A DNA stretch of 62,421 bases, filler included, from Polymyxa betae A26-41 (GCA_003693705.1; 6 parts of 6 records of this genome joined end to end with filler, not necessarily neighbours in it); one strand, 5' to 3'; shown: positions 4,155 through 25,200, numbered from the whole stretch's first letter. Notes: a model not told the origin generated them from the letters alone. Program-made: numbers and translations.

Positions 4155-4190
4155 TATTCAAATAATTGATTGTGATATCAAAGCCGAAGC

Positions 4191-5690: not shown

Positions 5691-5699
5691 ACCGCCCGT

Positions 5700-8530
5700 T
5701 CTGCGAAAAAGATGATTTAGACTCGCTGGATGATGTTTTTTCGCATTGCTGGAAGGTATATTGGTTTGCAATACAATAGTGCAGCTTTGATTCACATTGA
5801 TATCATAGATTCACAAGTCCGATGATATCCAGAAGATCAAACATCACTTTAAGAGCGAATTGGAGTATGCTAGGTAAGATTAATCTCGCCTATTTTATAT
5901 TGATATTTTATTATTTACTGTTACTGGAATTAGTTGGAGAAAGGGACTCAAAGGAGAGACGTTTGTAGTTCTAAACGGACCCAAATCGAAAGTGCAAACG
6001 CTGGTTTGTAATCGATCTCGAGAGAACCTGAACAAGAACACAAATGCTGTAGTAGAGAATAAGCAGCCGCTCATATTCTCGTGGGAATCTTGTAAGTTAG
6101 ATGCTTGCTGCTTAGCTCGTATGTATGTTTGGCGCAACGTCTCTGGCGAGGTCGACGTCGAGCACATCGCAACGCATTCGGGACACAAACCCACAGCATT
6201 CCAAGAGCAGCGCTTTCTGAAACTGTCGGAGCATGCATGTTATTGAGCAAATATCTGAGCAGTTACGGCTGGGGATCCTTTGCGATCGCATTGTAAAGAA
6301 TTGCAACGCTGCTCTTTCAAATCGCAACACCCGTAATTCCCTGATTGAGGTAAGCCTTTTCTAATGCGATCAGTTAAATCTAACACGACTGTGCATCAGA
6401 GCGGCGAAGTCGTCAGGGATTACATTATCACTCCGAAAGACGTTCTTAATATTAAAGCAAGGATTTTCATGACAAGCCTCAAGTCGCAGGATGTTGAGCT
6501 GACAGATGCTTACATTCGAGGCCTCCAGAACGAGATCTATAATCCTGTTTTATTTTACAAAGGTATACTATACTTTATTATCGTCGAATCCATTTATTGA
6601 TGCTGACCATGAATAGGCGCTCATGAAGACGACACATCTGGATTCGGATTCGAACGAAGCGAGTTCTGTGTTGTTCTGCAAACACAGTTCATGTTCGAGC
6701 GGATGAAAGAGTTGGTGTTTAATGCCGATTCAGAATTTGCATTAATTTCGTTGAATCAGGTTTGGGCACCGGGGCTGGGCCATTGATTCCACACATGGCA
6801 CCAACACATAGGGTTTAAATTCATCACTATCATCGTTGTTGACCATTTGACAAATCAGGGCTATCCCGCTTGCTTTTGTGTCACTTCACTCGAGAATAGA
6901 ATCGCGTTGAAATCTTTACTTTCAAGTTTAAGGGTATGTTGTTTTTGGCTATCGTCAAAATGCACACTAACTATCTTCGTTTATTTAGGCCAAATTTTCG
7001 GTTCTCGCTCCACGCGTGCTGCTCTCTGACGATGACAATAATGCTTGGAATGAGGGAAGTGCTATCTTCCCTTCAATGAAGAGTCATTTCTTATGCGTTT
7101 GGCATATTGATAAGAACTGGCAAAAAGCTGTAAGTTCTTAACCTTTTGGTTATCAAATCTGTGACCTGATCTGCATTTCAGCTATAAAAAAGACTTCGGG
7201 CTCGCGAGAACAGGAACGAGATGTACAGACAGCTTTGCTATCTTCGAATGATGCGTGATCGGGAATCGTTCCCTGAGGAGCTTGCAGGATTCGTAGCGAA
7301 ATGGGAGGTAAATGAAGATTTGTTTATCAAATATTTTGTAGATAATTATGCCAATCGCGCACAAACATGGGCGGTCTGTTATCGTGACCCAGATATGCCA
7401 GACACTACTGGACATTGCGAATCTTGGCGTAGGGTTTTTAAAAATAAATTCTTGAAGGGCAAGCAGAATATTTACGTCGAGCCGCTGCTGAGGTTGCTGA
7501 TGGACGCCGAAGAGTCATACTACAACAAATATCTCATGTCGAATTTGCTTTGTTTGATAGAGTTAGTCTGATGTCTGTAATAGGAGACTGACAGGAAAAG
7601 AATTCAAAATCAGCCCCATTTTTAATACCCGAATTAAGAAAGCCGTTCAAATCCCTGCCGATAGGGTTGAACAAATTCCTGGAGATGCCATCGACGGACG
7701 AACTCTTATGGTCAGGAATTCTGAAGAAACAAGAACGTACTTTGTTTCGGAGATAAGCTCAGTTATTGGATGAATGCAGAATTAATGTATAATTGTATAG
7801 AAAGCCAATAAGGTCTGTTTCAACGAGTACGAGGAAGCTGATCTGGAGAATGGTGTAAGCGACACCTTCAAAAAGGACTTGCCCTGCATGGCGTATCAGC
7901 TATGTCGTTCATCCGGCATTGCTGGAGTTGTACGTGCCACGATTACACAAGCTGTGGTCATCATTGCAAACCTTTGTTTGCCGGTAACTATTGAAATATT
8001 CGCATTGGACTTGTTTCTAACGTTTTTTTAGTTGCATTTCACCAAAAATGGTTTGACCCGAAGAACCTCAAAACTTCGAAAGGACTCCTGACGCCAGCAG
8101 ATCTGGAGATTGTGGCTGGTGTCAACAGCGCTGCCCAGGCTGTTGCTGCGGAAGAACTCCATGAGACTATCGCGCAGGCGTCCAAGCAAGACTCTACGCG
8201 TGCAGAATTCTTGGCGCAAGTGCATCTCCTAAATGAAGAGGCATGCGCTTTGAATTCTAACGCAAGCCTGGATTACGGTAACCTCATTTGTTTAGTCCAG
8301 GAACTGAGAACGCGTCTCACAGGGTCGAATGGCGATAGGATTGGGACTCCCGAGCAGCAGACGTTCTCGGGCGTCCAGCCAATGAGAACCTCCCCTAACC
8401 AGCATGTCAAGCGGCAGATGACCTTCAAGTCAACAAGGCCCGCTAAACGAAGGAAGGAGCAGGGTCGCAAACCAGATTTTCAAGACTTCACTCAGATCTC
8501 CCAAGACCTACGTAAGACACAACTTTCGCA
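5700..8530 (+). pseudogene. MULE transposase gene, probably intron-containing, degenerate
   Basis: WRKY/FAR1-like ESCKLDACCLARMYV...HSGH; IDSTHGTNT*GFKFITIIVVD; LLSDDD...FLCVWHIDKNW; DTTGHCESW. Short GT...AG gaps lie between coding blocks. Outer limits are approximate. Confidence 0.72.
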
Positions 8531-9209
8531 GCTAATTGAATTGTCCATAATTGTTGTTGTTAGGGTCTGCTGCTCCTCCTGTCGTCGAAGTTGGTGCTGT
8601 TTATGCTGCCACGAATCCCCGAAGTGATATTCAATAAATCCTATTATATTTCATCTCCACATTATTGTACGAAATACGAAAGTAGAGTTTTATTGCAATT
8701 TCACACAAACGATGGGATTGCACTCATTACAGATAACTTTTCGCAGCCGTTGGCTTGTAGAAAATTAATACAATCTTTCAAAGCAGAAAATACTCTTCGG
8801 TGATCGCTAACCACAAGCGACTTGCCGGTGAAGATATTTTGTCTCCACTAAAGCTCGAAAACAGGTCACAGCGTGCATCAACGTTAAGGTTGTTTTCGAC
8901 TTCACTTTCATTCTTCTCCTTGTTTGGCAACATCGTTTGTTGACCTTATGCTGCTCTGCCGAACGCTTAACTAGTCAATCGTTAGTAATCACTAAATGGA
9001 AACCAGACAAACAAGGAATCCTCAAACACAGGCGGCTGTATATCGACCTAATTCGGAAAAAGATTATTCGATTTTTTATTCCTAAGATAAATCAGATAAT
9101 CACTTTTTGTAGGCGATTTTAAGACCGTGACGGCAAAAACCGTGACGGCCAGCATCGTTGGAAGCGACTGGCCGTCACAGTCGGGCGCGACCCTCTGCCC
9201 TGGGAAGAT

Positions 9210-10227: not shown

Positions 10228-10400
10228 TTGAGGTGGCGCCGCTTGATAAAGGTCGAATAAAGAAACATACTGAGGAGTTACAGAAAGCGTTAACAGATAT
10301 GCATAAAACCGTAACATTTAAATCTGAGGAATTGAGGAAATTTACAAATGGGGTTAAAAATATGAGGAGGAAAGAACCATATATTACCGTTGGTGATTTC

Positions 10401-11351
10401 CAGGCCTCCTTAAATACGGAAATTAATAAATAGAATCCGTATGTTCCGTATTTCTCTCCTAGGAAATTCCGTATTTCGTAATATTTTTATTGAAAATTTT
10501 CTTTTGTTTTGAAAAAAGAAAATATTTTTTTGCAAAAACTTCCGGCGCCAAGCTGGTGAATCGTAATTGCAGTTGTCATGAGAATGATCTAACAATGCCC
10601 TGGAGTGCGTTTCAAGCTTACAAGGGCGCATGATCACACTTCAGCAGCAAAAATCGGCGGTACAAGAACAAGTTACTACTTTACAGCGATTCGCGTTTGT
10701 TGAACGCATTCCGGAAGAAGCAGCCCAAGACTCAAGTGACGGCTTCGACGTTAAGAAGAACAGGCAGGTCAGTCAGAGCGATTTGATTGGACAAATCAAT
10801 GATCAAGGCGTCTTCACCATCCGGGCGCTGGATGGTCTCGACCCGGATGGCAGAGAGGAGGTGGTCCGGGCTGTTGGACAAATTATTCTCTCACAATTGT
10901 TGATGGTCTCAGAGCGGTCGACGCCTTTCGCGATGATGTTAACAACACCACCAGCGACCAAGACATCAGCTGATTGTCATTGAATCCGTGGGATATCGCG
11001 CAGACGAAAGCTTTGAGCCGCCATTCAGTGAGGACCGAGTCAAGTTTGCGAGGTTTGGACGACTCCTGGCCTGAAGAACAAATTTCCAGAGCTGACTTTT
11101 TCCCAATACTACGACAGTATAAAGCGACTTTTCTATCATTAAGTGGGAAAAAGACATCCATAGATGAGCAATGACGCCGTTTTCATTGGAGGGCGTTTTA
11201 CATTGCCGATGATTCGGTCATTGCTGAAGCAATTGCCTGGGAATACTGCCTTTCTAAGAAAGATCCGTATGTTCCGTATTTGGATCTCAGCCTGTGCCGT
11301 ATATTAGTAAAATACGGAATATAAGGAAAAATCCGTATTTAAGGAGGCCTG
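10401..11351 (+). mobile_element. non-autonomous hAT element (951 bp)
   Basis: Perfect 20-bp TIRs CAGGCCTCCTTAAATACGGA. 8-bp TSD GTGATTTC at 10393-10400 and 11352-11359. Subterminal CCGTAT repeats and an internal coding remnant. Confidence 0.93.
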
Positions 11352-11495
11352 GTGATTTCGTCCAATTAATAAAGAAATCCGCAAATATAAACCTACTTCT
11401 CAAGTCTAGTTTCAGCCACAGAATCACAAAGTGGGTGTGACTGTGTTCTTCCGTATATTATTGGAAAGTGGATTTGAGTAAACCCTCTTTGTATT

Positions 11496-12649
11496 ATGTC
11501 GTCTTCTGAGAAGGAGAGCTCTGGATCTGAATGCAAAGTTGATTCAGATGAAGAGCTATGGGATGGTTTCAGCTTCTTGAACCGATCAGCTGTAATGGCC
11601 CGGAACGCTATAGAAACCGAGACTAAAGAGCCTGGCTCTCAACAATCTGTGAATCCAGCAGAGGGCGTTCGTGATATTAATGGTAACCTATGCAGAACAC
11701 CGTCGATTTTCAAAAACCTGACCAACTTTACGGTTGACGAGTTCGAAGAACTATCAACCCTCGTATGCCCCGTAATCGCGCTAACCGCTAGGTCCCCTTT
11801 GGAAATAATTAAGGGAGCCGGCCGTCCCCCGAAACTAAATCCTGCTCAGCGATTGATGAACTTTTTGTTATTTTTGAAGCACGATAATTCATGCAATCAT
11901 GATGCGTTCCAATGGAATTGGGCACGCAGCTCTGTCTGCGATGATGCTATTTTTATCGCCAAGTGCATTGCGCAGGCGTGCGCGGAAGAAATTCGCTGGC
12001 CGAGTTCTGTTGAACGAGATGCTTCAGGCCGATTTATCCCGCAATTGCCTGGATGTATCGGGTTTATAGATGGCTGTGCCGAATTCGTCGTCCTTACAAC
12101 GATCCTGATGAGCGTCGCTGGTTCAACGGTAGAAAAAAGATGTATTGCTTTAACAATACTGTCGTTGTAGACCATCATGGATTGTTTATTTATGTTGATC
12201 CTGGCTATCCAGGAGGTTTCCATGATGTCAATATTCTTCGCGAGTCCGAACTCGATCAAAACTGGAGAGAGCACTTTACCGATAGGGAAAATTACCACGA
12301 GTATTCGTGTGGCTAATTGTCGATAATCATTTGTTATTGTAGGCCAGGATATGGATATCATGCGACGCATCGATAATAGGGAAATTGATAATGATATTAT
12401 TCCTGGCGTTATACATGCATTCAAAAAAATGCATGCCGGAATTCGAATCGCCGTGGAATGGGGTATCGTCGGCTTGAAAAGAAAATGGAAACGCCTGATG
12501 AAGGGCTTCGATTCCACGAAGCAAAGTTCCCTGACATATTCATATCACCAGCGATTCTAACGAATTTCTTGCATAGACGTCGGCGAGCGTTCCGAGTAGA
12601 GATAGAGCGAAACGGAAATCCTGGTGTTGGATGGAGATTTGATTATTAA
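11496..12649 (+). pseudogene. Harbinger-type DDE (DDE_Tnp_4-like) transposase, frameshifted
   Basis: CIGFIDG, FNGRKKMYCFNNTVVVD, YVDPGYPGGFHDVNILRES and RIAVEWGIVGLKRKWKRL. Confidence 0.85.
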
Positions 12650-12699
12650 TCGGCATTCATGGCCATTTATTTACAAGCTCTAAATATATACATAACTAA

Positions 12700-13484
12700 A
12701 GATTAAGCAGCTCGGCTGCCTTCTTCTTCATGGCTTCCTCAGTAAAGAGCCCCATTTTGAAGGCATACTTCAAATTCGATAGCTCTATCTGAACGTTCTT
12801 TCGCTTCAAGTGATCGTTCCACGCCTCAGCAGAAGATTTAAAATCTTCTGCGGGCTGCGCCGCGTGTTTGTCTTGAGGATATCGCCGAGGCGTTTGACCC
12901 CGAAATCCGGTTTTATTTCCGGAACTGCGGCACTGGCATTTTCCGAAGGTTGCGAGGGTTCGCAGACGCCGCTGATGATTGCCTCACGCTTTGCCAGCAT
13001 GACTTTAGAGGCATACGTGTTCGTCAATTTGAGGCGCTTTATTACGTCCTCATTCTGGAGCACCGCTTTTCCGTTTCCCTCATTTGAAGTACCGGTTTTT
13101 AGCTCGCTCAAAGATTCTCTAACGTGCTTCTGCACGTATTGTTGATCGAAATCGACACATTCCGGAAAGGTCTGGGTCAAGTCCTGAAACATTTGGAGAA
13201 TTTTTGTGGTTAGGTTTGCAATTATATGGTTTTTAGCTAGATTTACCTTCTTCCAAACAGCTCCAGGGATGAGCTGGGTAATGTTTTTCTTAGACTTGCT
13301 GTATTCTCGGCAAAATGGCAGTGTTTGATGCCACAAGCGTGCTCAGATGGTTGGGATCGATTTTAACGATCGATTTCCGCTTGCGGTTCTGTGCTGATGT
13401 TAGATCAGCGCCTGCTTCTCCGGAACCGGATGATGTTGTTTCGACATCAGGTACAAATGCCCTCGATCCCAAATGGTTATCCAT
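12700..13484 (-). pseudogene. Harbinger second ORF (putative DNA-binding partner), frameshifted
   Basis: ORFs 13290-13484 and 12806-13336 are convergent with the transposase inside the TIRs, matching the usual two-gene layout. Basic NLS-like NRKRK. Confidence 0.55.
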
Positions 13485-13698
13485 CGAAAATCACAACAAA
13501 GATCACTCAGAAATCAGTTATAAAGCCAAACAGAGTTTGAAACTGGAGCCACGTCCACTTTTATTGCTTAAAACAGTTTCACATCCACTTTAATGTAACT
13601 GGAAGCTGACTGGGGGGCTCTTCGAGTTTCTACATCAAGTTTGACCAAAACTGACTGTGACTAGATCCTGTTCCAGCCTATTTACGGACGTCTTTAAT

Positions 13699-13833
13699 GC
13701 GTGAGTCACACTCTGTGGATTCTGTCATCTAACTTGACTTCAACTACTTCATCAAAAACACAACTTCCTTAGTTTCTGTCAACCTCGAACACCTTCGTTT
13801 ATTTAGTATCTTAGTTTCTCTCAGACTTCGTTT
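13699..13833 (+). repeat. 5' LTR (main part; first 7 bp displaced to 11364-11370)
   Basis: Direct repeat of 18629-18763. Confidence 0.9.
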
Positions 13834-13847
13834 GGTTATGGGCCCAG
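13834..13847 (+). promoter_or_regulatory. Copia-type primer binding site GGTTATGGGCCCAG
   Basis: Abuts the LTR end. Same sequence as the initiator-Met half-tRNA PBS of Drosophila copia-like elements, and identical to 59015-59028 (-). Confidence 0.88.
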
Positions 13848-14917
13848 ATCAACCCTCTCTATCTCGATCACGTTCAGAATCTGTGCCACCTTCGAACCGC
13901 CGTCAGGAAACGGTCGACGTTCAGATGCTACAACAATTTGCTTTTCCTACACATGACCAACAAAATTCTGCCAGTACTAATGTTCAACAGCAGCAGCAGC
14001 TTGAATTTGCACAGCGGACAATCCGCGAACAAAATGAGCAGCTGCAACATCAACAACAGCAATTAGTTTTACTCCAACAGCAACCTCAACAGCAACAGCA
14101 GCACCTTCAGCAACAACAACACATGCCTCCTCAGCAAAATATGTCATCAAATGTGCCCAACGTTCCGCTACCTGAAAAATTTGATGGAGACAGGAGAAAG
14201 TTTAGAGGTTTTCTCAACCAACTTCGATTGATCTGGCGGCTTCCGCCCAATCGCTATCCAACGGATGGCATACGGGTCGTACTGCTCGGCATTCTCTTGA
14301 AAGGTCCAACACTACAATGGTTCAATCCATTCCTAGAAGCTGAAGATCCCCGTCTCCTGCAACTGTCGACTACCATTCAGTTATTGGAGGGTGCCTTCGG
14401 GGATCCTGATAGAATATTAACAGCATCAAGATGAATTGAGAATCTGCGACAAGGTCGACGATCTGCCAGTGATTATGCTGCGGAATTTCGCCTAACAGCA
14501 TCCGACCTTGACTGGAATGACTCAGATAAAACGTATTATTTCCAAAAAGGCCTGAATAATGGCGTAAATAGCTTGCTCTTACATAAACCTAAGCCCGCCA
14601 ATCTGGTTACTGCAAGTAACGACGCTATCGAAGTTGATAACCGGCTTCTCGAGCTTTTGAATATAACCAGAAACACCTACAGAATGTATGCATCATCTAA
14701 TCCATCGCCTACGGTAAACATGGGAATCAATTCTGACGCAATGATACTCGATGCTACCATACCTAGATCTCAGCCACGCGCGCCATTAACCGATGAGGAA
14801 AGAAAGCGCCGCAGAGAGAACCATCTTTGCCTGTATTGTGGACAGCCAGGGCACATCGCTGTTTCCTGTGATATACTGGCTTCGAGAATGTCGGGAAATG
14901 CCGAAAGACGTGGATGA
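13838..14917 (+). pseudogene. Ty3/Gypsy (PEG10/sushi-like) gag, one in-frame stop at 14432-14434
   Basis: Gln-rich N-terminus, PEKFDGDRRKFRGFLNQ, LKGPTLQWF, LRQGRRSASDYAAEF, LDWND, and EERKRRRENHLCLYCGQPGHIAVSC (CCHC). Confidence 0.88.
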
Positions 14918-14939
14918 ATAAACAATCGGTCTCCGCGTC
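14893..14939 (+). promoter_or_regulatory. putative -1 ribosomal frameshift signal
   Basis: Slippery heptamer G GGA AAT in gag frame (14893-14899), 7-nt spacer, then stem GACGTGGA (14907-14914) / TCCGCGTC (14932-14939). The -1 frame is open past the gag stop. Confidence 0.65.
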
Positions 14940-15002
14940 CGAGTTCACACAAGAATCTCCTGAAAATTCCGATCAAACTAATGCAGAAGTTACACATGAA
15001 AC

Positions 15003-15700
15003 CACGGAAACTTGAAAATCTCAACAATAGCGTCTAATCATCAACCACACCTTACCGCCCAAGTCATATTAGAGATACCACGTGTGTCGTTTGTCTCCTA
15101 CGTGAACAAAGGCTTTACAATTGAGAGCACAATTGAATTATGATTTAGTAGAATTAGATTCCAGGCCCCAAGGTCTCGTCCAGGCCGGCCAGCGTAGTTC
15201 TCGTTCCGGGCTTCCGGAGGCCGGACGGTGACTCACGCAGTTTCCGCCGCCACAGGGCCTCCAGTGGCGATTTGGCCNNNNNNNNNNNNNNNNNNNNNNN
15301 NNNNNNNNNNNNNNNNNNNNNNNNNNNNNNNNNNNNNNNNNNNNNNNNNNNNNNNNNNNNNNNNTGAGACAGCCTCACTACACACAGGTCGGGAAGATCC
15401 TTTGCATCTAACAGCACTGATAGACTCCTGCTCCTTCTCAGAGTTCATAGACAGAAATATTGTTACGAACGAAGGCATTCCAACCGTCAATTCAAGTCCG
15501 TTAAATGTTGAAGCCATTGATGGAAGAAACCTCGCACCCGTTACAAAGATATCTATACCTTTGAAATCAACTGTATGCAATAACTCAGAAATGATGAAAT
15601 ATTACGTCATCGATTCTCCTCATAACCCAATTTTCTGGGAATCCCGTGGCTCAAAAGAAACAACCCATCCATCAACTGGAACGACTTCACGATCAACAAT
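15003..15700 (+). pseudogene. Gypsy-type aspartic protease, interrupted by an LTR insertion
   Basis: Removing 15083-15388 restores HLTAQVILEIP-(G/R)REDPLHLTALIDSCSFSEFID in frame. LGIPWLKRNNPSINW follows after a frameshift. Confidence 0.8.
15083..15384. mobile_element. inserted LTR (solo, or element collapsed in the N gap)
   Basis: TGTGT...ACACA termini; near-TSD CACG/CAGG. 15365-15384 is the reverse complement of 35023-35042. Confidence 0.65.
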
Positions 15701-15837
15701 CGTGTGTGTGGCGTAAATCGCTTAGAAGCAAATGTGGACTATCACATCAATTCTGCTTTGATCGTCAATGAAAACAGCTCTCGTACAACAAATCCTTTTC
15801 TTGTTAATCCTATACCCGCCGCGCTAGGCTAAAGTTT

Positions 15838-18614
15838 ATGACTTGGCATCACAGTCTTGGACCTCGAAATGTTAGAGACATTTCTTCGAATGGCAAACAA
15901 AAAACTTACAAAGGATATGTCACTGGACGACACCACATCACAAGACCCTGGATTCTGTGAAGCTTGCGTCATCGGTAAAGCCAAAGCGGCGCCATTTCCA
16001 AGAGTTTCTAAGATTAAGAACTGGGACTTGCTGGGGCGTGTTGATGTCGACGAATGCGGACCATTACCAGTAGCTTCGATAAACGGAAAAAGGTACTTTA
16101 TCAGTTTTTCTGATCGCAAAAGCAAGTTGAAATTCACATACCTTTTACACCGAGAGAATGATGCATTATCAAGATTCAAATCTCTTGGAAGGAAACCCGA
16201 GAAACAAGTAGGAAACCCTATTAAATGTCTTTTCGGTGACAATGCTGGTGAATTCGTGAACAGAGAGTTCCAGGACTATATCGATAAAGCAGGGATTGAA
16301 TGGAGGTCTACCGTACCGTTTTGTTCGGAGCAAAATGGAATCGTGGAAAGAAGTCACCTAACGCTTATGGATTCAGTTCGTTAAATGCTACTACATGCGA
16401 CTTTACGAAACAGTTTTGGGGACCGGCCATTCTCACCGCGCCTCGCATATCTACAATGTATGTCCCCATCTCAACGATAAGGGTTCCACGCCACATGAAC
16501 TACTGAATGGAAGCAAACCGGATATTCGTTATCTTCGGGTGTTTGGATGTGATGCTTACGCCTTAATACCAGAGCATTCCCGGACAAAGCTTGACCCTTG
16601 AGCAGGAAAATCAATATTCTTAGGTTATGCACAGCATCAAAAGGGATACCTGGTTTATGATGCAGACTCTGGAAAAATCTCTGTTCATCGCTCAGTGTTT
16701 TTCAAAGAAGACGGGTTTGGAACACGAGATGCTTCCATGGCTTTGGCTGACCCAATACAGCCTGACGATGACTGTACCAGTAATTATCAGTTCGACGGAA
16801 CCGATGAGAATCTGAAGAAGACGACAGCTCTCGCGAATCTCTCGAATCTTCGGTTCAGGGAGGGATTGTGGAGAATATAAACACAACAGCGAGAGCCGTA
16901 AGACAGCGAAAATCTGTACCAAGTTATGGTAATCCCGTGAGCCACAATTGGATCCACGCCATAGTCAACCCTGACAGCAACACGCCGATCACCTTCAAAG
17001 ATGCGACATCATGTCAACATGCTGGACTCTGGATTCAAGCAATGAATGACGAGCTGAAATCTCTTCAGGATCACGGTATATGGCAGGATGTTGAGCGATT
17101 ACCTGCAGGGAAACATTCGATTGGTTGCCGCTGGATATACAAATTCAAGAGAATAACGACATCTGACATTTCATCCGGTTCAAATTGGATACTGAAGCAT
17201 CATGAGGATGGAACGTCCTCGAGGAACAAGGCCCGGTTAGTGGTACAAGGATTCAGACAAAAACACGGACTGGATTATCACGACACGTACGCTCCAGTCA
17301 TGAGAACAGACATTCTGCTGTTAATTGTCGCCCTGTCAATCCATGATCAGTCAATTGTTGCAGAACAAATGGATGTTGTCACTGCTTTCTTACATGCTCC
17401 TCTTTCAGAGGAACTTTATATGAGGGCTCCGGAAGGATACAAGTCAAGGTCAAAGTATGTGAGATTGCTGAGATCGTTATTTGGACTCAAACAGGCTCCT
17501 TACGAATGGTTTAAGACAATTGATCAGATTCTGGTGACGGACCTGGGGTTCACAAATTAAAATCCACAACATGCCTTTACGTCAAAAGATCACCTTCTGC
17601 ACGTTACTGCATTGTTGGTGTATATGTTGATGATTTACCGATAATCGGGCATCCAGAAATGGTCCAAGCGTTGAAGGATGCATTATCACAGCGCTTCAAA
17701 ATGACATATCTGGGAGCACTATCTCATTGCTTAGGCATCAGAATTCATCGAAACAATGAAGTTGGCACAGTATTCTTAGAACAAGGAAAGTACCTCCAGG
17801 AAATTCTTGATCTTTATGAAATGAGCGACTCTAAACCTCAGTCAACTCCAGCCAACACCGCTATTAAACTGACGAAGCAAACGTGCCCGAAAACTGATGA
17901 CGAACGACAGCAAGTGGCCCAGTTTCAAAGCAAAATTAATTACCGTTCTGCCGTTGGACATTTGATTTGGTTGTTTCATACCAGACCTGATATTACTTAT
18001 GCTGTTGGAGAGGTGTCACGATATGTAGAAGATCCTTGTCCAGCACACTTTGTCGCCTTAAAGCGAATATTCCGCTATCTAAACGGCACTAAAGCCTATG
18101 GACTTCTGTACAAAAGAGGCGCTTACTCAAGAATCGAGCTGAAAGGATATTCTGACTCCGATTGGGCTGGCGTTATCGACACCAAACGGTCCACGTCCGG
18201 ATATATTTTTCTTCTGAATGGACGTTCTGTATCCTATCACAGTATGAAACAAACATCGACTGCGTTGTCTTCCGGCGAAGCAGAAGTTATTGCTTCTAGT
18301 CTGGCTTCTGCTGAGGCAGTCTGGCTATTTGATGTGTTAAATGAGTTGGGATTTTGTGCGCAACTTCCGGTCACGCTTTTTCAGGACAATATTGGCTCTA
18401 TTTCTTTTGGCTTGAACGAGGTCAATCATTCGAAATGAAACATATCGCGCTAAGGGAAAACTTTGCTCGAGAACTCGTGAAGAATGGAACTGTGACTTCC
18501 AGTTATATTGCTACTTCTGAGAATCTTGCTGATTTTCTCACAAAGTCTTTGGGGCCAATCAAATTCGAATACTTTCGTACTAAGATCGGATGTGCTCAGA
18601 ATCCATTAGATTGA
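15838..18614 (+). pseudogene. Ty1/Copia integrase - RT - RNase H, with several stops and frameshifts
   Basis: WHHSLG...CEACVIGK, VDVDECGP, DNAGEF, EQNGIVER, LRVFGCDAY, ARLVVQGFRQKHGLDY, MDVVTAFL, YVDD, GYSDSDWAG, KHIALRENFARE, ADFLTKSL. INT precedes RT. Confidence 0.93.
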
Positions 18615-18621
18615 GGTAGGG

Positions 18622-18763
18622 AATTAATGCATGAGTCACACTCTTGGATTCTGTCATCTAACTTGACTTCATCTACTTCATCAAATAATACAACTTCCTT
18701 AGTTTCTTTCAACCTCGAACACCTTTGTTTATTTAGTATCTTAGTTTCTCTCAGACTTCGTTT
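18622..18763 (+). repeat. 3' LTR (142 bp, AATTAAT...CGTTT)
   Basis: Preceded by purine tract GAGGTAGGG and followed by TSD CGTCC. Confidence 0.9.
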
Positions 18764-20714
18764 CGTCCTAGTAGGCGATCCAGAACCGGCGAACTCTAGA
18801 GGACAGAAGTTATTTTTGAAATGGAGAGGGCCGTTTAGGATTACGGATACTGAGGATAATTATATTTTCGAAGTTGAGGCGTGAAATCGCCTATTTTTAT
18901 TCGTTAAAGATGTTTTCGTTTTAGGTCACGTGCCCTTCCTGTGACCTAGTGTATCTGACCTCAATACAGTACCATAGTTCTTTGTGTGCTATCATCTTTT
19001 CATCTACTTTCTAGTTTAGACCCTGGCGGCTCGGAAGCCGTCTCATAGGCCTATTTTCGTACTTCCGCTCACGCTCCTGCTCGCTTTGTAGCTAAGCTCC
19101 GAGTTCTGCGTAACTCTCTTCCTCAAATCAGGGCCTCCCCTTTGGGTGTCGTGCCCGTTTCCTCAACCGAGGTTCGTCGTCTGGCGTCGACTATTCGTCT
19201 TTGTCGTTGCCAACCGTTCCGCTCCCTCTTAACACACTCTTTGTGTTGACTGGTCGATATTGACCGTTTCGCTTCACCTGTTTTCTCTCTCTCCATTCGA
19301 GCTTCAGACTCTCTCTGGGTCGGGTCCCGAGTACAGCGAAGAGGTCTTAGGTGGCAGTTCAGTCGTCTGTTAGACGACGTTTAGTGATCGAGGGGAAGGC
19401 TTCGGCCGCGGCTTGGTTGCCAACCGATACCCTAGCAATTCTACTGTCTTTAGTCGAAAAGTTACGGTTGCCGAAACTTAGTAGACACTAAACACTTCAG
19501 AAGTGTCCTTGGTTTCTGTTCCCACGAGTTAGTCCAATCTCATTGTTCCAATCGTCATGAACCCTGTTCAAACGTCTATGATTGCGCCCCAAAAGCTGGA
19601 AGGCTACGACCGCACTGTTGTCAAAGCTTTCATTATCGAATGGGAAGCTTATAAGGATCGGATCAAGCGTTTCAATGAAGCCATTAAGGATGAGAATCGA
19701 AATCTTTCTGCTATTCCTCTCCGGGATGCAATTGTACCATGGATTTTACAGCATGTATGTACTTACATACTTAAGTTGCCATCAGGCTCAAATAAGACTG
19801 TGGTTGATGATATCTTGCTAAAGCATCTTCAAGAGTATACCGGCCTTGCGGTCCGGAATGCTTACGGCAGCAGAGACCTTTTCAAGTCTCTGAAACTTGT
19901 CCACCATGGCGACCCTCAGCTGAGTGTTATGGACCTTTTCCGCCCGTCCGAAGAGATCGTAGACAAGCAAGACCTAGTCGAACATTTCAGTAAACACACA
20001 GAGCTGCAGAAGAAGCAGATCCAAGGCATGGTGGAAGCTTTGCATCCCGACTCGCTGCGCGAAACTGTGAAAGCTGCCCTGGATGTCGAAGAGATCGAAT
20101 CACAAGCCGATCTTGGCAAGTTTCGTGATTTTCTTCTGGAGACGTTGAAGGCGTTCAAACGGTTCTATCGTGACGTTCATGGCTCTTCCAGCAAGACCTT
20201 TACATGCACTTCCAAACCCCTAGAATGTTTCAAGTGCAAAGGGTCCCATCACGTTCTCAAATGCTCCAGCTGTACTCCTGATGAAGCCAAGCGTTTACTG
20301 GAGGAATTCAGGCAACGCAAACGAGCAGAAGAGGCTACTAATCCCGCCACTTCAGCGCCCTCGTCAAGTGCTACAGCAACAACTCAGCAGAACAAAACCG
20401 GCTCTAAGCCTGCGAACACCCATACGGGTTCGTCCAGTTTCTATAAAACAAACTTTACAAGATCACAAGCTACGTCGGGTACAGCTACTACCGCTGCTAC
20501 GCCGTCCAGTTCTTCCAATGCTGCCAGCACATCCGCCACGCCACAGACCGGCCCATCGACCGGTTCATCGGTTGCTGCTAAAGCCAATCGTTTGGCTGTT
20601 GCTGATTATTATTCCTTCTGGTCTGCCCCTGCAATCCCATCTCCTGTGCACCTAGCCTCTGTTGCTGGCCCAATTGAGAACGCCACTGCCTCCAGTAATG
20701 CTCCAGTGCCGCTA

Positions 20715-22917
20715 CCGTCTTAACCCGAAAATAACACCATGATGTTGTATTCGAGTTTCCGAAAATTTTCGGTCGCCCAAAACATTCTCAATAAATCCAA
20801 ATATAACACCACTTCGCATATAACACCATGGTTTTTTATTCGAATAGATCACCACTTACTAAAACAGATCAACAATGAATCAAAGGTAGCAGCTAGATCA
20901 TGCAAACAGCGAAATAATTGCTCAATTGCACTAATTTAACGTGCTCAACTGAGGCTGCAGCTGAATAAACAAACGAAGAACCAGTCTCTGCGTTTTTCAC
21001 TTCAATGTTCCAGTTCTCTTTTACCGATGCAGCAAAGATTTCCAGTTCCGCTGCAGGAGCCATGCCGTTGTGCAACTTTTCGAAATACTCCTCATCAGTG
21101 ACATCGCGAAGTTCATCCATCGACTTCATAAAATTAAGCAAATCTTCCTTGTAGGCCATCCAGCTGTCCATATTCGTGCCACTTTTACGGGCTAAGCACA
21201 TAAACAAACTATCAGAATCTACATCAGGCAGATACCACTCAGGAGGCTGGTAAACTTCTTCATCATTAGAACTGCTTTCCAACTCGACATAAGACGAATA
21301 TAACTCATTCCATCTGGTGATATCAAACGAAGGTTCGAATAATGCCTTTAAAGGCGGATGTAGGATCTGGAGGTCCAAGTAATCTTTCGGAAGTAGACCG
21401 CAAATCGCAAATGCGTTAGAGAATCTGGTCGGCTGTTTTGGTTGCAATCCATTCGACGATCCAATTTGAAACAGTTAAATAGCCAGGGACTTTAGGGTTT
21501 CCAGCTTTAGTTTGCAACGTTGGGTCTTCCAAAGCGAGGCCAATAAACTTGTCGTAGCATGTTTGATAATATGCCTGGAAACTCCTATTAACTGGACGTC
21601 CAACGGTTGGAGAATGTTGGTTAAGTTAGGTGGGATAATGGCGATGAAAATGTTGTACTTCTCAAGGGCCTTAGATTTTGCCAATTTGATATGAACGCCA
21701 TATGAATCCATGATCAAAAGTGTTGGCTCCCGAAAAAACGCCGATTCGACCCGAGATATTATTGCATCTTTGACGAACTGAAGTAAGATGTCATCATTCC
21801 ACATGCCCGTCTTGTTAACATCAACAAGCACACTATCATGAGCAGACGGCTTGTTTTTCAATCCAGATAAGAGTAAATGCGGTTTTAATAGCTTTCCTGT
21901 GCTAGTAATCCAAATGTCACCGCCAATAGTTTATGGGAAGTACCGCCTTTTTTCAAAAGAACCTATAATCCAACATCAATAGCCATCTGACCATTAATTG
22001 AGCAAGTCAACTTACATCGCGACTTCCTTTGGTGGTTATAGTTGATGTCGGTTCAGTTTCAAAGTAACGGGGTACTTAATCCATATTGATTATGTTTTTT
22101 GGTTTGATTGAATGGGATTCGATTAAATGATGAACAAGCTGAATAAACCTTCGACAACTATCGTCCGCAGCAACCGGTAGAGAACGACAGGACGTCTGTC
22201 TTCGCGAAACAAGATTATGGCGAACTTTAAATTTTGAAACCCAACCAGGCGAAGCAATGAATTCCGCATCATGGTCAATTGAGCCGTCCTCCTTCGCTTG
22301 GCTGAATAAATTCAATGCCTTTTGCTGAATATACTGATCCTTGACACGTAATCCTTTTTTGTTCTTCAATTTGATCCAATCAATCAGCTGTGCCTCTAAC
22401 TCTTCGAATTTGGGTTTTCTTCCTCCACCGTTTAAACGTCGTGTCTTTCGGGTTTCGACATCATCATCTTCTAGCGCGGCTTCAAGTTCATGCTTTTTTT
22501 GTATCCAGCCTCGAAGAGTATCTCTACTGACACCGGTTTGCTTCGCTAAGGCAGGTAGGCCCTTACCGACTACGCCTTTTTCATACATCCGAATAATATC
22601 GAGTTTGGCCTTTATGGTGTAGCTTTTCCTCTTAGAGGCCATGCTTGTTTCAAACGAGCCAGACGTTCCAATCCGTAGTTCGATTTAATTGTGAAAGAAG
22701 CTGTGTCTAAGGTACCACAGAAAGATCTCTCGCGTAACTCAATCCGCGGCCTTTGTTATAACTTCAGTGATTAAAGAGTTTTTAGAAAAAGAGATAATAA
22801 AGTGTACTTAAGAGCTGAGTAGTTTATGGGACCTTAATACACTACGCTCTCCATGAAAAAAAGTTGTTCAATTCAATCTAAATACAACACCATGGTGTTA
22901 TTTTCGGGTTAAGACGG
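20715..22917 (-). mobile_element. pogo-family DNA transposon inserted in Gypsy gag-pol
   Basis: 37-bp TIRs CCGTCTTAACCCGAAAATAACACCATGRTGTTGTATT (1 mismatch). TA TSD at 20713-20714 and 22918-22919. Confidence 0.95.
20893..22642 (-). pseudogene. pogo transposase (HTH + CENP-B HTH + DDE_1) with C-terminal OTU-like region
   Basis: KRKSYTIKAKL, GGGRKP, FIASPGWVSKFK, IINMD, LIMDSYGVH and LQPLDV, then DSDSLFMCLA...AAELEIFAAS. Stops and frameshifts present. Confidence 0.85.
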
Positions 22918-24933
22918 TAGTCTCCAAATCAATTCCTCGGCTGATTTCCTCGGTCCGTATTGTGGTGGGCTCTCGTGGTTTCAATTTTGCAACCATTCTG
23001 GATGACGGCGCTGATTACACCGCTGTCGGCAAGAATTCATGGACTCTCATATCTTCTGCCGAACCCGAGACTTGTCAAGTCATGCAATGTTTCAGTTTAG
23101 ACGACGGTTCCGTTCATAGTTCTTCTTTGAAGTTTCTCGCTGATATTGCCATTCACCCGACGGCTGGACCCGTAACGGTTCGTCGTCATTGGGTTCACGT
23201 TCTTGATGTCGACATGCCTGAAGTCCTCCTCGGGCGACCGCTTCTCCTCGTCTTAGGCATTGATGTGGATAGCATGGTCACCGCGCTTGGCGCTCAACAC
23301 CTTGACGTTGTTGATGAGCCCGATAATAATTTTGCTGTTTCAACTGTTGAATCAGCCAACTCGGATCATGCCGATCATGACGATGTTGCGCCATCATGAC
23401 TGTTGGAAGAGGACGTAGTCATCCTGGGTGCGTCTGATGACTCTGAATTAGACCAAGCTCTCAACCAGATCGTGCAAGAGACCGTAAAGCAAGGCGCCAC
23501 TTCCGACTTTGTCGAACGTCTTCGCTCATTAATTGCCGATTATCGCGATATTTTCAGGGTCAATCTTGGTCCAGATCCTCCTGTTGATATTCCCCCGTTT
23601 CTCATTGAATTGAAAGAGGATGCACGGCCGGAGCTGTGTCGACCTCGTCGCCAGCCCCCCTCTTTACTCTCAGTTTCTTACAGAGCACTTCCAGCAGCTA
23701 ATCAATTACGGTTTTGTCGTTCCAAACCCGGATTCCGCCTGGTCTTCTCCAGTCTTATTCGTTCCTAAACCCGGTCAGAATAGAACTCTACGTTCAGTTG
23801 TTGACCTGCGTTATCTCAATTCGCAGATCCGGCGAAGGGTGTACCCAATGCCCCATCTCCACGCTGTCGGTGAATTCCTTTCTAATTCGACGGTTCTCGA
23901 AACTTTGGATGCCTTCAAGGGATTTTGGCAGTTCCCTATTGGTGGTGCAATCGAATCTCAATCTATGCTGACTCCTCTCGGTATTGTTACGCCGCTTTGC
24001 CTACCTCAAGGCAATACCAACTCCGTCTTCGCTTTCCAGCAAGGCATGGAGACCATCTTTCGCCCTTCTCTCACACAGTCGCAACTCCTTATTTGGATCG
24101 ACGACTTATTGGCCCACGCCGCGTCCATTGAAGATCTTCTCGCCATTCTTCAGGTCATCTTCGAGTCATGCAAAGTTAGGAATCTCAAGCTGAACGCTCT
24201 GAGGTGCCGTCAATACTTAACTGAGGCAAAATACTGCGGGCGCCTGTATTCAGCCGGAACCGTTCGTCACGATCCCGCGCGTATCGAATCGCTCACCGTC
24301 ATGCCCTCCCCTTCAAATGCGGCCGATCTTATGCAGTTTTTGTGTGCCGCTACTTGGATCAGCAGTCATATCCCTGATTTTGAACGTCACGCTCGCCCAT
24401 TACGAGACCTGTTAGAGCACCTAATGCAAGGCCATGCCACGCGATCAAAGGCTGTCGCTCGCCGCATACCTGTTCTGGCAAGTACCTGGACTGACGCTCA
24501 TGATGCAGCTTTCAAGGATACGATCCACGCCATATCAAATTCTGCTACTCTCCATCACCCTCGTGAAGAGTACGATCGCTGCCTCTTCACAGACGCATCG
24601 TTGGATTCCTATTCCATTATCATCACTTAAGTCGACCCAGTGGAACTCTCGAAGCCGTTGCCTGAACAAAATCTTTTACCGCTCGCTTTGTTTAGTCGTA
24701 GCTTGCGTGGTTCTGCAGCCCGTTGGGCAATTCCGGAGAAAGAGACGTTCCCGATTATTGATGCCATCCAGAGGTTCGACTATCTTGTCATCTATGAGCG
24801 TAAGCTGCGTATTTTCACCGATCATCGTAACATGATGTTCATCTTTAATCCGGAGACTACGTCGGTGCCCCTTAAGCAACACACGCTCGACAAACTTTAT
24901 CGATGGTCTCTGAAGCTCAGCTCAGTGGATTAC

Positions 24934-25200
24934 TGTCATGAATCTGCGCTACTTTCTCCAACCAGGGTGCTCCTCAATCTGTCCCTTACCGGTTCGAGCC
25001 ACCAGCGTCGGCGGCCGGTTCCTGTAAATAGGGCAGAGAGGAAGGAGTGACCGACCCTCTGTGGTTCAGACGAAGACTAGTACCACCGCCGTTGACCAAG
25101 GCTGTTGATCCGTAAGTCTTCTGTGTACGTTAAGGATTCGGGCTAGTGACTGTGGTTGCCACTGCTACCCGACTGTCCGCCAATTTTCGCGATCTTCCCT
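24934..25200. mobile_element. probable further LTR start truncating the Gypsy RNase H
   Basis: Coding similarity ends at TGTCATG (24934) and the sequence runs to the contig end. Confidence 0.35.

What the first reader, a model, noticed from the sequence alone, without database searches (positions are those of the whole stretch)
11364..18763. Apparent Gypsy/Copia chimeric LTR retrotransposon
Seen: one pair of LTRs with a 5-bp TSD. Inside, in order: a Copia PBS whose ATG opens directly into a PEG10/sushi-like Gypsy gag (PEKFDG, LRQG..S..DY..EF, LCLYCG..GH...C), a GGGAAAT -1 frameshift signal, a Gypsy-type protease (ALIDS...LGIPWL..NPSINW), a ~50-aa linker, then Copia INT (WHHSLG/CEAC), RT and RNase H in Copia order. 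The N gap lies inside a separate inserted LTR whose removal restores the protease frame, and the PR-INT junction is in gap-free sequence. Known: Copia and Gypsy gag/PR are distinct and normally travel with their own pol; the ordinary Copia gags at 45799 and ~58990 look quite different. Inference: a lineage in which Copia enzymes are packaged by a Gypsy-type capsid and protease. The TSD and matched LTRs suggest it transposed in this form. I know of no described family like this but cannot search. This copy is decayed.
Basis: partly seen in the sequence, partly recalled or inferred. Interest (0 to 1): 0.92.

Follow-up and report, generated by a model that had tools for sequence, protein, structure and literature searches.

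The report
Copia retrotransposon with Gypsy capsid-protease module
This is a dead copy of a real and widespread family of Copia-type jumping genes whose shell protein, protease and frameshift signal came from a Gypsy-type element, showing that such modules can be swapped between two retroelement families and still give a working element.

Summary
The mixed architecture is real and belongs to a lineage. It is not a one-off. The element spans 13694-18763, not 11364-18763. It has 140-bp LTRs 95% alike and a PBS complementary to the anticodon stem-loop of initiator tRNA-Met, with the gag ATG inside the PBS. Gag is Ty3/Gypsy-type (Pfam DUF4939, Retrotrans_gag; PDB PEG10, Ty3). A G GGA AAT slippery site is followed by a covarying stem-loop. 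The protease is Gypsy-type. Copia INT, RT (RVT_2, 1e-35) and RNase H follow in Copia order. The window copy has at least ten stops or frameshifts. The N gap sits inside a ~312-nt insert that relatives lack, away from all junctions.

At least nine other elements share the architecture. Two are intact with identical LTRs (L006, L007). One, in Plasmodiophora brassicae (L010), has a perfect 5-bp TSD. Pol trees nest the family inside Copia. Its sister (L011) has an ordinary Copia gag and protease but the same LTR ends and the same ATG-in-PBS. Family gag is 25-44% identical to Gypsy gags and matches Copia gags only at the zinc knuckle.

Best reading: a Copia backbone replaced its gag-PR and gained -1 frameshifting from a chromovirus-like donor, then spread. 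My literature searches found no description.

The parts
13689..13693 (+). candidate 5' target-site duplication, CGTCT
   Evidence: Matches CGTCC at 18764-18768 in 4 of 5 positions, and only if the LTR starts at 13694. Weak on its own.
13694..13833 (+). 5' LTR (140 bp)
   Evidence: 134/141 identical to 18624-18763. It ends ...GTTT directly before the PBS, as in L005, L006, L007, L010 and L011.
13834..13847 (+). primer-binding site GGTTATGGGCCCAG, complementary to the anticodon stem-loop of initiator tRNA-Met; it contains the gag start codon (13838)
   Evidence: Sequence. The tRNAiMet antisense probe printed in PMC5648532 contains this 14-mer internally. The same PBS follows the LTR in L005, L007 and L008, L010 (1 mismatch) and L006 (1 mismatch).
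13838..14917 (+). gag, Ty3/Gypsy (PEG10/sushi/Ty3-capsid) type with a CCHC zinc knuckle; one in-frame stop at 14432-14434
   Evidence: Pfam DUF4939 3.8e-7 (above cutoff); Retrotrans_gag 4.7e-4 and zf-CCHC below cutoff. 64% and 57% identical to the intact gag P0001 across the stop. The family gag profile hits PEG10 7lga at 8e-15 and Ty3 6r22 at 2e-10.
14893..14899 (+). slippery heptamer G GGA AAT for -1 ribosomal frameshifting
   Evidence: Lies at the same place, six codons before the gag stop, in 8 elements, as G GGA AAY or G GAA AAC. Pol is in the -1 frame in all of them.
14907..14939 (+). stem-loop 7 nt after the heptamer (arms 14907-14917 and 14930-14939); it encloses the gag stop codon
   Evidence: RNAalifold consensus of 10 pairs, 7 with compensatory changes. 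92% of cells are paired against 38-51% with slid partners, and 0 of 500 shuffles reach the observed values.
14896..15080 (+). pre-protease region (-1 frame to ~15010, then frame 0 from ~15021; one frame break between them)
   Evidence: The translations align with the region upstream of the L001 and L005 proteases (HLTAQVILEI against YLTARIQLRL).
15081..15392 (.). foreign, GC-rich insert that interrupts the protease; it holds the assembly gap 15278-15364
   Evidence: Absent from the proteases of the relatives. No other copy in the piece. No Rfam or tRNA match. Its nature is unknown.
15393..15715 (+). protease core, Ty3/Gypsy retropepsin type (ALIDSC..., IDGR, LGIPWL..NPSINW); frame break near 15634; the active-site DSG reads DSC here
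   Evidence: Of 11 family proteases, 8 hit Pfam RVP_2 (best 1e-13) and none hits Copia's Pol_BBD. In the PDB the profile hits DDI1 and the Ty3 Gag-Pol protease.
15716..15837 (+). PR-INT linker (~40 aa, poorly conserved), gap-free
   Evidence: The same junction lies inside single ORFs in P0006, P0154, P0156 and P0157.
15838..16865 (+). Copia-type integrase (WHHSLG/CEAC zinc-binding part, rve core, SH3-like domain), with several stops and frame breaks
   Evidence: Pfam rve 1.6e-5 (below cutoff) and SH3_retrovirus 2e-10 and 1.2e-9. The homologue P0006 hits gag_pre-integrs at 4.2e-9.
16868..18611 (+). Copia-type reverse transcriptase and RNase H (stop at 17558 with a frame break; frame break near 18436)
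   Evidence: Pfam RVT_2 1.1e-35 and 1.7e-7. Pol, read through with X at each break, is 62% identical to L005 pol over 684 columns and falls inside the family clade.
18613..18623 (+). polypurine tract GAGGTAGGGAA
   Evidence: Equivalent purine runs precede the LTR in L005, L006, L007, L010 and L011.
18624..18763 (+). 3' LTR
18764..18768 (+). candidate 3' target-site duplication, CGTCC
   Evidence: See the 5' TSD entry.

Best explanation
The window holds a decayed copy of a distinct lineage of Ty1/Copia (Pseudoviridae-type) LTR retrotransposons. The LTRs, the internal tRNA-iMet primer-binding site, the start codon inside that site, the polypurine tract and the INT-RT-RNase H genes are of Copia descent. 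The capsid-nucleocapsid gene (gag), the protease and the gag/pol expression device (a -1 frameshift heptamer plus stem-loop) descend from a Ty3/Gypsy chromovirus-like element. A single recombination most likely replaced the region between the PBS and the start of integrase in a Copia ancestor. The hybrid stayed competent for transposition and diversified, at least in Plasmodiophora brassicae (Rhizaria) and in unidentified eukaryotes in several metagenomes.

Shown: the architecture, its conservation, the intact ORFs, the young copies, a TSD, the covarying frameshift stem-loop, and the phylogenetic placements.

Inferred: a Gypsy-type Gag makes the particle that packages the Copia-type RNA, primer and enzymes; the Gypsy-type protease cuts the Copia-type Pol; frameshifting sets the Gag:Pol ratio; and the mode of origin (template switching or DNA recombination).
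For: (1) Independent members share the architecture. L005 reads RNase H end, PPT, LTR, PBS/ATG, intact 325-aa gag, -1 PR, INT-RT. L006 has 100% identical LTR segments, a gag ORF and a 1126-aa pol with RVP_2, gag_pre-integrs, rve, SH3_retrovirus and RVT_2. L007 has 135-bp LTRs 100% identical. The others are L008, L009, L003, L004 and L001. L010, in P. brassicae GCA_001049375.1, has LTRs, a PBS and a perfect TSD GAGGT.

(2) Pol is Copia. RVT_2 scores 1e-35. Family pol is 41-50% identical to the normal Copia P0158 (E reported as 0 for two of the three family pols, 9e-140 for L005) and gives no significant BLAST hit to a Gypsy pol (E 0.4-1.8). In the INT-RT-RH tree the 10 family rows form a clade (SH-aLRT 82), sister to P0158 (99). 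The RT tree rooted on Gypsy RT nests that group behind P0180 and P0213.

(3) Gag and PR are Gypsy. Pfam hits are Retrotrans_gag, DUF4939, Ty3_capsid and RVP_2. PDB hits are PEG10, Ty3 and DDI1. Family gag is 25-44% identical over its full length to gags of Gypsy elements (E 1e-18 to 1e-70) and matches Copia gags only at the zinc knuckle. Among the best 150 protease hits with a downstream domain, 3 carry Copia INT (all in the family) and 14 carry a Gypsy RT or INT. L002, whose gag is 52% identical to the window's, reads chromodomain, LTR, gag and has the same heptamer.

(4) The backbone is Copia. The sister L011 has an ordinary Copia gag (Retrotran_gag_2) and protease (Pol_BBD) in one gag-pol ORF, yet shares the AAT...ATT LTR ends and the GGTTATGGGC PBS with the start codon inside it.

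(5) The frameshift signal is conserved and covaries.
Against: The gag-PR tree does not resolve the family as one clade. The AU test does not reject monophyly (p 0.28), but that does not prove it, so more than one capture is possible. Support for family monophyly in pol is moderate (82), and it is a trichotomy with P0158 in the RT-only tree. Trees were built with the quick method on samples biased towards close relatives, with no GyDB or REXdb reference set. No clear TSD was found for L006 or L007, and the window's own is 4 of 5. No expression, particle or transposition data exist. The heptamer variant G GAA AAC in L005, L007 and L009 is not a canonical X XXY YYZ site.
Confidence: 0.88

Rival explanations
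1. One-off artefact: a nested insertion, a post-insertion recombinant or a mis-assembly around the N gap joined a Gypsy gag-PR fragment to a Copia element in this genome only.
For: The window is a graveyard of transposable elements, with Gypsy, Harbinger and pogo remnants nearby. An assembly gap and a foreign insert lie in the protease.
Against: The same architecture occurs in nine other elements from six metagenome assemblies and one sequenced genome. Their junctions lie inside single ORFs, and among them are identical LTRs and a perfect TSD. The gap is not at any junction.
Confidence: 0.02
2. Ancestral retention: this is a deep-branching Copia lineage that kept a Gypsy-like gag and protease inherited from the common ancestor of the two superfamilies. 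No exchange took place.
For: Copia and Gypsy capsids and proteases are distantly homologous (established knowledge). The tree samples here are limited.
Against: The family is nested in Copia behind P0158, P0180 and P0213 when rooted on Gypsy RT. The sister P0158/L011 and all other close Copia carry Retrotran_gag_2 and Pol_BBD. Family gag is up to 44% identical (52% for the window fragment) to chromovirus-type gags, while family pol has no BLAST-detectable similarity to Gypsy pol. The same heptamer sits at the same place in the chromovirus L002.
Confidence: 0.06
3. Several independent captures: different sub-lineages (window/L005/L001/L003; L006/L007; L008/L009) acquired Gypsy gag-PR modules separately.
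For: In the gag-PR trees the sub-lineages do not form one clade, and a starred split groups the window sub-lineage with Gypsy rows.
Against: The AU test does not reject a single clade (p 0.28). All members share the same junction positions, the same heptamer position and the same stem-loop with compensatory changes. They also form one pol clade. Gag evolves fast and the trees are weakly resolved.
Confidence: 0.1

Closest known systems
Ty1/Copia elements (Pseudoviridae), especially those that prime from an internal fragment of initiator tRNA-Met (Drosophila copia, yeast Ty5; Hemivirus)
   Same: RVT_2 reverse transcriptase. Integrase with gag_pre-integrs, rve and SH3_retrovirus. Order PR-INT-RT-RH. 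Short LTRs. PBS complementary to the anticodon stem-loop of tRNAiMet. 5-bp TSD (L010). The nearest relative with an ordinary gag is L011/P0158, 41-50% identical in pol.
   Different: Gag is not Retrotran_gag_2/UBN2 and the protease is not Pol_BBD. Gag and pol are separate frames joined by -1 frameshifting, whereas the sister L011 has one gag-pol ORF (Drosophila copia uses splicing and Ty1 uses +1 frameshifting; from memory). The LTR ends read AAT...ATT/TTT rather than TG...CA, a trait shared with L011.
Ty3/Gypsy chromoviruses with PEG10/sushi/Ty3-type gag (Metaviridae)
   Same: Gag (PEKFDG box, Retrotrans_gag, Ty3_capsid, CCHC knuckle). Retropepsin (ALIDSG... ILG.PWL..NP.I.W; RVP_2). G GGA AAY heptamer just before the gag stop. 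25-44% gag identity. The example is L002/P0002.
   Different: There is no RVT_1 reverse transcriptase, no RT-RH-INT order, no Integrase_H2C2 and no chromodomain. The LTR and PBS are of Copia descent.
Gmr1-like elements (Goodwin and Poulter 2002, cited in PMC2774666): Ty3/Gypsy elements with a Copia-like pol domain order
   Same: A mixed appearance, with Gypsy-type features combined with the order PR-INT-RT-RH.
   Different: In Gmr1 the RT itself is of Gypsy type and only the domain order changed. Here RT and INT are true Copia genes (RVT_2, Copia clade) and only gag-PR is Gypsy.

Membership tests
Ty1/Copia (Pseudoviridae) | Reverse transcriptase of the RVT_2 type that groups with Copia RTs | tested here: met
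   RVT_2 1.1e-35. Trees. 41-50% identity to the normal Copia P0158.
Ty1/Copia (Pseudoviridae) | Pol domain order PR-INT-RT-RNase H | tested here: met
   Window. Single ORFs P0154, P0156, P0157 (and P0153, whose PR is N-terminally cut).
Ty1/Copia (Pseudoviridae) | Copia-type integrase (gag_pre-integrs zinc-binding part, rve, SH3_retrovirus) | tested here: met
Ty1/Copia (Pseudoviridae) | Copia-type Gag (Retrotran_gag_2 / UBN2 / TYA) | tested here: not met
   No such Pfam hit in the window or in intact family gags. The hits are Retrotrans_gag, DUF4939 and Ty3_capsid. BLAST to Copia gags matches only the zinc knuckle.
Ty1/Copia (Pseudoviridae) | Copia-type protease (Pfam Pol_BBD) | tested here: not met
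   None of 11 family proteases hits Pol_BBD, and 8 of 11 hit RVP_2. The normal Copia relatives nearly all carry PF22936.
Ty1/Copia (Pseudoviridae) | tRNA-iMet primer-binding site next to the 5' LTR | tested here: met
   GGTTATGGGCCCAG at 13834-13847, contained in the antisense tRNAiMet probe of PMC5648532.
Ty1/Copia (Pseudoviridae) | 5-bp target-site duplication; TG...CA LTR ends | tested here: inconclusive
   Perfect 5-bp TSD in L010. The window's is 4 of 5. None is seen for L006 or L007. The LTR ends are AAT...ATT/TTT, not TG...CA.
Ty3/Gypsy (Metaviridae) | Reverse transcriptase of the RVT_1 type that groups with Gypsy RTs | tested here: not met
   No RVT_1 hit. No significant BLAST similarity to the Gypsy pol P0051. 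The Gypsy RTs form the outgroup.
Ty3/Gypsy (Metaviridae) | Pol domain order PR-RT-RNase H-INT | tested here: not met
   INT precedes RT.
Ty3/Gypsy (Metaviridae) | Ty3/PEG10-type capsid gag and RVP_2-type retropepsin | tested here: met
Gmr1-like Gypsy elements | Gypsy-type RT combined with a Copia-like domain order | tested here: not met
   The RT is RVT_2 and falls in the Copia clade.

The most novel reading that the evidence does not exclude
This is a previously unrecognised lineage of retroelements that was recently active. It was created by exchange of the whole structural and protease module, with its frameshift signal, between two virus-like families (a Pseudoviridae backbone and a Metaviridae gag-PR). 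It occurs in Rhizaria, including the clubroot agent Plasmodiophora brassicae. It would be a natural demonstration that capsid, nucleocapsid and protease are interchangeable across Ortervirales families, despite different primers, integrases and polyprotein layouts. It could warrant its own named clade.
Probability: 0.6. Interest if true: 0.8.

Novelty: new variant of a known kind. Interest (0 to 1): 0.72.

Why it matters
Classification and annotation of LTR retrotransposons assume that gag, protease and pol travel together within a superfamily. Tools that call 'Copia' or 'Gypsy' from one domain will mislabel these elements or split them as nested insertions.

Biologically, a successful hybrid means several things must hold:
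- A Gypsy-type capsid and nucleocapsid can package a Copia genome and its half-tRNA primer.
- A Gypsy-type protease can process a Copia polyprotein.
- A -1 frameshift cassette can replace the single-ORF expression strategy of the Copia parent.

These points make module compatibility in retroelements directly testable. The case also adds a documented inter-family recombination to the modular evolution of reverse-transcribing elements. Naturally intact copies (L006, L007) and a copy in a sequenced protist give starting material.

Tried and rejected
Rejected. There is no LTR similarity there; it lies just after an unrelated element with terminal inverted repeats.
- Insert as a solo LTR. It could not be supported, and Rfam and tRNA scans were empty.
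- Gag searches in the 90%-cluster protein database gave few hits (2 and 10), because of the length window and the Q-rich words. The protease profile search of the representative library and the pol search were the productive routes.
- No repeat pair was found around the L003 copy, which is 5'-truncated.
- No TSD was found for L006 or L007 under any boundary I tried.
- The exact-sequence look-up of a window ORF, meant to identify the source organism, found nothing, so the host of the window is unknown. Its GC content of 41-49% differs from the 57% of the P. brassicae locus.
- One tree script did not return and was rerun with a simpler model.
- In the RT-only tree I cut the first window piece in the wrong frame, which produced a long branch. 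The correctly framed pol tree is.
- My impression that 18767-18884 encodes an integrase C-terminus got no tblastn support.
- Eight literature searches (the seven that asked for a description) and five papers read found no description of such a lineage. This is absence in the searchable library only.

Full report
**What is in the window**

The only long direct repeat around the finding is a pair of 140-bp LTRs at 13694-13833 and 18624-18763. They are 134/141 identical with two 1-nt gaps. The element is therefore 5.07 kb and starts at 13694, not at 11364.

The stretch from 11364 to 13693 belongs to other transposons:
- a 953-bp element with perfect 21-nt terminal inverted repeats that ends at 11352;
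- a Harbinger-type DDE_Tnp_4 transposase remnant at about 11496-12600.

Directly after the 5' LTR comes GGTTATGGGCCCAG (13834-13847). This 14-mer is contained, internally, in the antisense probe for human initiator tRNA-Met printed in PMC5648532. So it pairs with the anticodon stem-loop region of tRNAiMet, not with the 3' end. From memory, that is the priming style of Drosophila copia and yeast Ty5. The ATG at 13838 lies inside this site and opens the gag frame.

**Reading frames of the window copy**

- **Gag** runs from 13838 to the stop at 14915-14917 in one frame, with a single in-frame stop at 14432-14434. Pfam hits are DUF4939 (3.8e-7, above cutoff), then Retrotrans_gag (4.7e-4) and zf-CCHC (1.8e-3), both below their cutoffs.
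- **Frameshift site.** Six codons before the stop is G GGA AAT (14893-14899).
- **Protease.** The -1 frame continues into a pre-protease stretch. After a frame break the protease follows (15021-15080 and 15393-15715), with a further frame break near 15634.
- **Integrase, RT and RNase H.** A ~40-aa linker leads to a Copia-type integrase (WHHSLG, CEAC, rve below cutoff, SH3_retrovirus 2e-10). RVT_2 follows at 1.1e-35, then RNase H, a polypurine tract and the 3' LTR.

The copy carries at least ten stops or frame breaks, and the protease active site reads DSC. It is dead.

**The assembly gap**

The gap (15278-15364) lies inside a ~312-nt GC-rich stretch (15081-15392). That stretch has no counterpart in the proteases of relatives: HLTAQVILEIP is followed, after the insert, by EDPLHLTALIDS, where L001 has YLTARIQLRLNNQEYQLTALIDS. 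The protease frame is the same on both sides. The gap length is only an estimate, so continuity cannot be tested.

None of the three informative junctions (PBS-gag, gag-PR, PR-INT) is near the gap, and gap-free relatives show the same layout. I could not verify that the insert is a solo LTR.

**Is it a lineage?**

Yes. A profile of the protease searched against 1.84 billion representative proteins gave 278 hits. The best six are close relatives. One of them, P0006, holds the gag zinc knuckle, the Gypsy-type protease and a Copia integrase N-terminus (gag_pre-integrs 4.2e-9) in a single ORF. It is followed on a 48.7-kb contig by an SH3_retrovirus and RVT_2 ORF.

The contigs fetched from these and from a pol search give nine further elements:

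| Locus | Source | What it shows |
|---|---|---|
| L005 | JGI 3300079107 | RNase H end, PPT, LTR, PBS with the ATG inside, intact 325-aa gag, -1 protease, INT-RT |
| L006 | JGI 3300067093 | 100% identical LTR segments, a 313-aa gag ORF, and a 1126-aa pol ORF with RVP_2, gag_pre-integrs, rve, SH3_retrovirus and RVT_2 |
| L007 | ENA ERZ25039503 | 135-bp LTRs 100% identical, PBS, a 348-aa gag, and a pol frame open for 1193 codons |
| L008, L009 | JGI 3300066482 | gag fragments and full pol ORFs (P0156, P0157) |
| L003, L004, L001 | ENA assemblies | partial or truncated copies with the same Gypsy-type PR (L001: gag and PR only; L003, L004: PR joined to Copia INT) |
| L010 | Plasmodiophora brassicae GCA_001049375.1, contig CDSF01000096.1 | see below |

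In L010 the LTRs flank Gypsy-type gag (4096-4803), PR-INT (4980-6244) and RT-RH (6441-8638). The PBS is GGTTATGGGCCCAT. A perfect 5-bp target-site duplication, GAGGT, flanks the element.

Members are only 50-64% identical in pol and 34-63% in gag. So the architecture is old, conserved and recently mobile.

**Which parts come from where**

*Pol.* In an INT-RT-RH tree the ten family rows, including the window read through with X at each break, form a clade (SH-aLRT 82). That clade is sister (99) to P0158, and next (100) to P0180, among ordinary Copia polyproteins. An RT tree rooted with Gypsy RTs keeps this group nested behind P0180 and P0213.

P0158 has Retrotran_gag_2 and Pol_BBD, which is the ordinary Copia gag and protease, in one 1289-aa ORF. 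Its contig L011 shows LTR ends AAT...ATT and the PBS GGTTATGGGC with the gag ATG inside it (M-G-S...), just as in the window and L005 (M-G-P...). So the LTR, the PBS, the start codon and INT-RT-RH form one Copia backbone.

*Gag.* Family gags are 25-44% identical over their full length to gags of Gypsy elements (E 1e-18 to 1e-70). They match Copia gags only at the zinc knuckle. Conversely, family pol is 41-50% identical to P0158 and gives no significant BLAST hit to a Gypsy pol. The gag profile finds PEG10 (7lga, 8e-15) and Ty3 Gag (6r22, 2e-10) in the PDB.

*Protease.* Eight of 11 family proteases hit RVP_2 and none hits Pol_BBD. In the PDB the protease profile finds DDI1 and the Ty3 protease. 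Among the 150 best protease hits that extend into a downstream domain, 3 carry Copia INT (all in the family) and 14 carry a Gypsy RT or INT.

*Candidate donor type.* L002, whose gag is 52% identical to the window's, reads chromodomain, PPT, LTR, gag. That layout is a chromovirus.

*Gag-PR trees.* The family sits with P0002, P0143, P0014 and P0048 on one side of a well-supported split within the Gypsy sample. Its own monophyly is unresolved. An AU test does not reject it (p 0.28).

**Expression device**

In every family member pol is in the -1 frame relative to gag. The heptamer G GGA AAY sits six codons before the gag stop; L005, L007 and L009 have G GAA AAC instead. The chromovirus L002 has G GGA AAT in the same position.

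Seven nucleotides downstream lies a 10-bp stem that encloses the stop codon (window 14907-14917 with 14930-14939). Seven of its ten pairs show compensatory changes. 92% of cells are paired, against 38-51% when partners are slid, and none of 500 shuffles reaches the observed values.

The Copia sister L011 has no frameshift. So the frameshift cassette most likely arrived with the gag-PR module. This last step is inference.

**Most likely mechanism**

A Copia ancestor resembling L011 lost the segment between its PBS and its integrase and gained the corresponding gag-PR segment of a chromovirus-like element. This could have happened by template switching between co-packaged RNAs or by DNA recombination after nested insertion. 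The data do not distinguish the two.

The hybrid makes a Ty3/PEG10-type Gag. About six codons before its stop, a fraction of ribosomes slips -1 to make Gag-PR-INT-RT-RH. The Gypsy-type retropepsin would release Copia-type enzymes. Reverse transcription would start from a tRNAiMet fragment at the Copia PBS, and integration makes 5-bp duplications.

Shown: the anatomy, its conservation, intact ORFs, young LTRs and one TSD. Inferred: particle formation, protease specificity, the Gag:Pol ratio and priming.

**Comparison with what is known**

- It works like a Copia element in replication enzymes, primer and gene order.
- It works like a chromovirus in particle, protease and translational control.
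- It fails two defining features of Copia (gag type, protease type).
- It fails two defining features of Gypsy (RT type, domain order).
- It is not a Gmr1-like element, where the RT is Gypsy and only the domain order is Copia-like.

Literature searches and the papers I read found no description of such a lineage. The papers were Llorens et al. 2009, Muszewska et al. 2011, Wang and Han 2021 and Kojima 2025. That is absence from the searchable library only; Repbase and Dfam could not be consulted.

**Limits**

- The host of the window is unknown.
- The window's own TSD is 4 of 5 and depends on the boundary chosen.
- L006 and L007 show no clear TSD.
- Trees used the quick search on relatives picked by similarity.
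Broken frames were read through only with X at each break inside scripts.

Noticed in passing
L010:3537-3729 and 8633-8803; L011:405-529; L007:1185-1319; window 18622-18763: The LTRs of this family and of its ordinary-Copia sister do not end in TG...CA. They start AAT or AGT right after the polypurine run and end ...ATT or ...TTT right before the PBS. The P. brassicae copy's TSD fixes the ends as AATCGG...CTAATT.
   Followed up: partly
window 13838; L005:509; L011:534: The gag start codon lies inside the primer-binding site (GGTT ATG GGC ...), giving M-G-P or M-G-S. The window sub-lineage and the ordinary-Copia sister share this. L006 and L007 start gag further downstream.
   Followed up: partly
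L005:1460-1466, L007:2468-2474, L009:401-407: Three members with long open gag and pol frames have G GAA AAC in place of G GGA AAY at the frameshift site. This is not a canonical X XXY YYZ heptamer, yet pol is still in the -1 frame and the stem-loop is kept.
   Followed up: no
window 10400-11352: A 953-bp element with perfect 21-nt terminal inverted repeats (CCAGGCCTCCTTAAATACGGA) and subterminal CCGTAT repeats. It is probably a non-autonomous DNA transposon.
   Followed up: no
window 11496-12600 (+) and 12806-13336 (-): A Harbinger/PIF-type transposase remnant (DDE_Tnp_4, 1.3e-10) with frame breaks, and a 176-aa ORF on the opposite strand with no Pfam hit.
   Followed up: no
window 20893-22642 (-): A pogo/Tc5-type transposase N-terminus (HTH_Tnp_Tc5 4.5e-14, CENP-B_N 2.2e-7).
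   Followed up: no
window 23620-25050 (+): A genuine Ty3/Gypsy RT-RNase H remnant (RVT_1 1.7e-13, RT_RNaseH 1.8e-13) that runs to the edge of the piece. It is unrelated to the element studied.
   Followed up: partly
window 19557-20723 (+): A 388-aa ATG-initiated ORF in a locally GC-richer stretch (49%), with no Pfam hit and no exact match on record.
   Followed up: partly
window 15081-15392: A GC-rich insert of unknown nature that splits the protease and holds the assembly gap. There is no second copy in the piece and no Rfam or tRNA hit.
   Followed up: partly
L002:1-190: This 1.5-kb metagenome contig reads chromodomain, PPT, LTR, gag. It is evidently a collapsed assembly of a multi-copy chromovirus. 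L005, L009 and L011 are circularly permuted in the same way, so their contig ends are not genomic flanks.
   Followed up: partly
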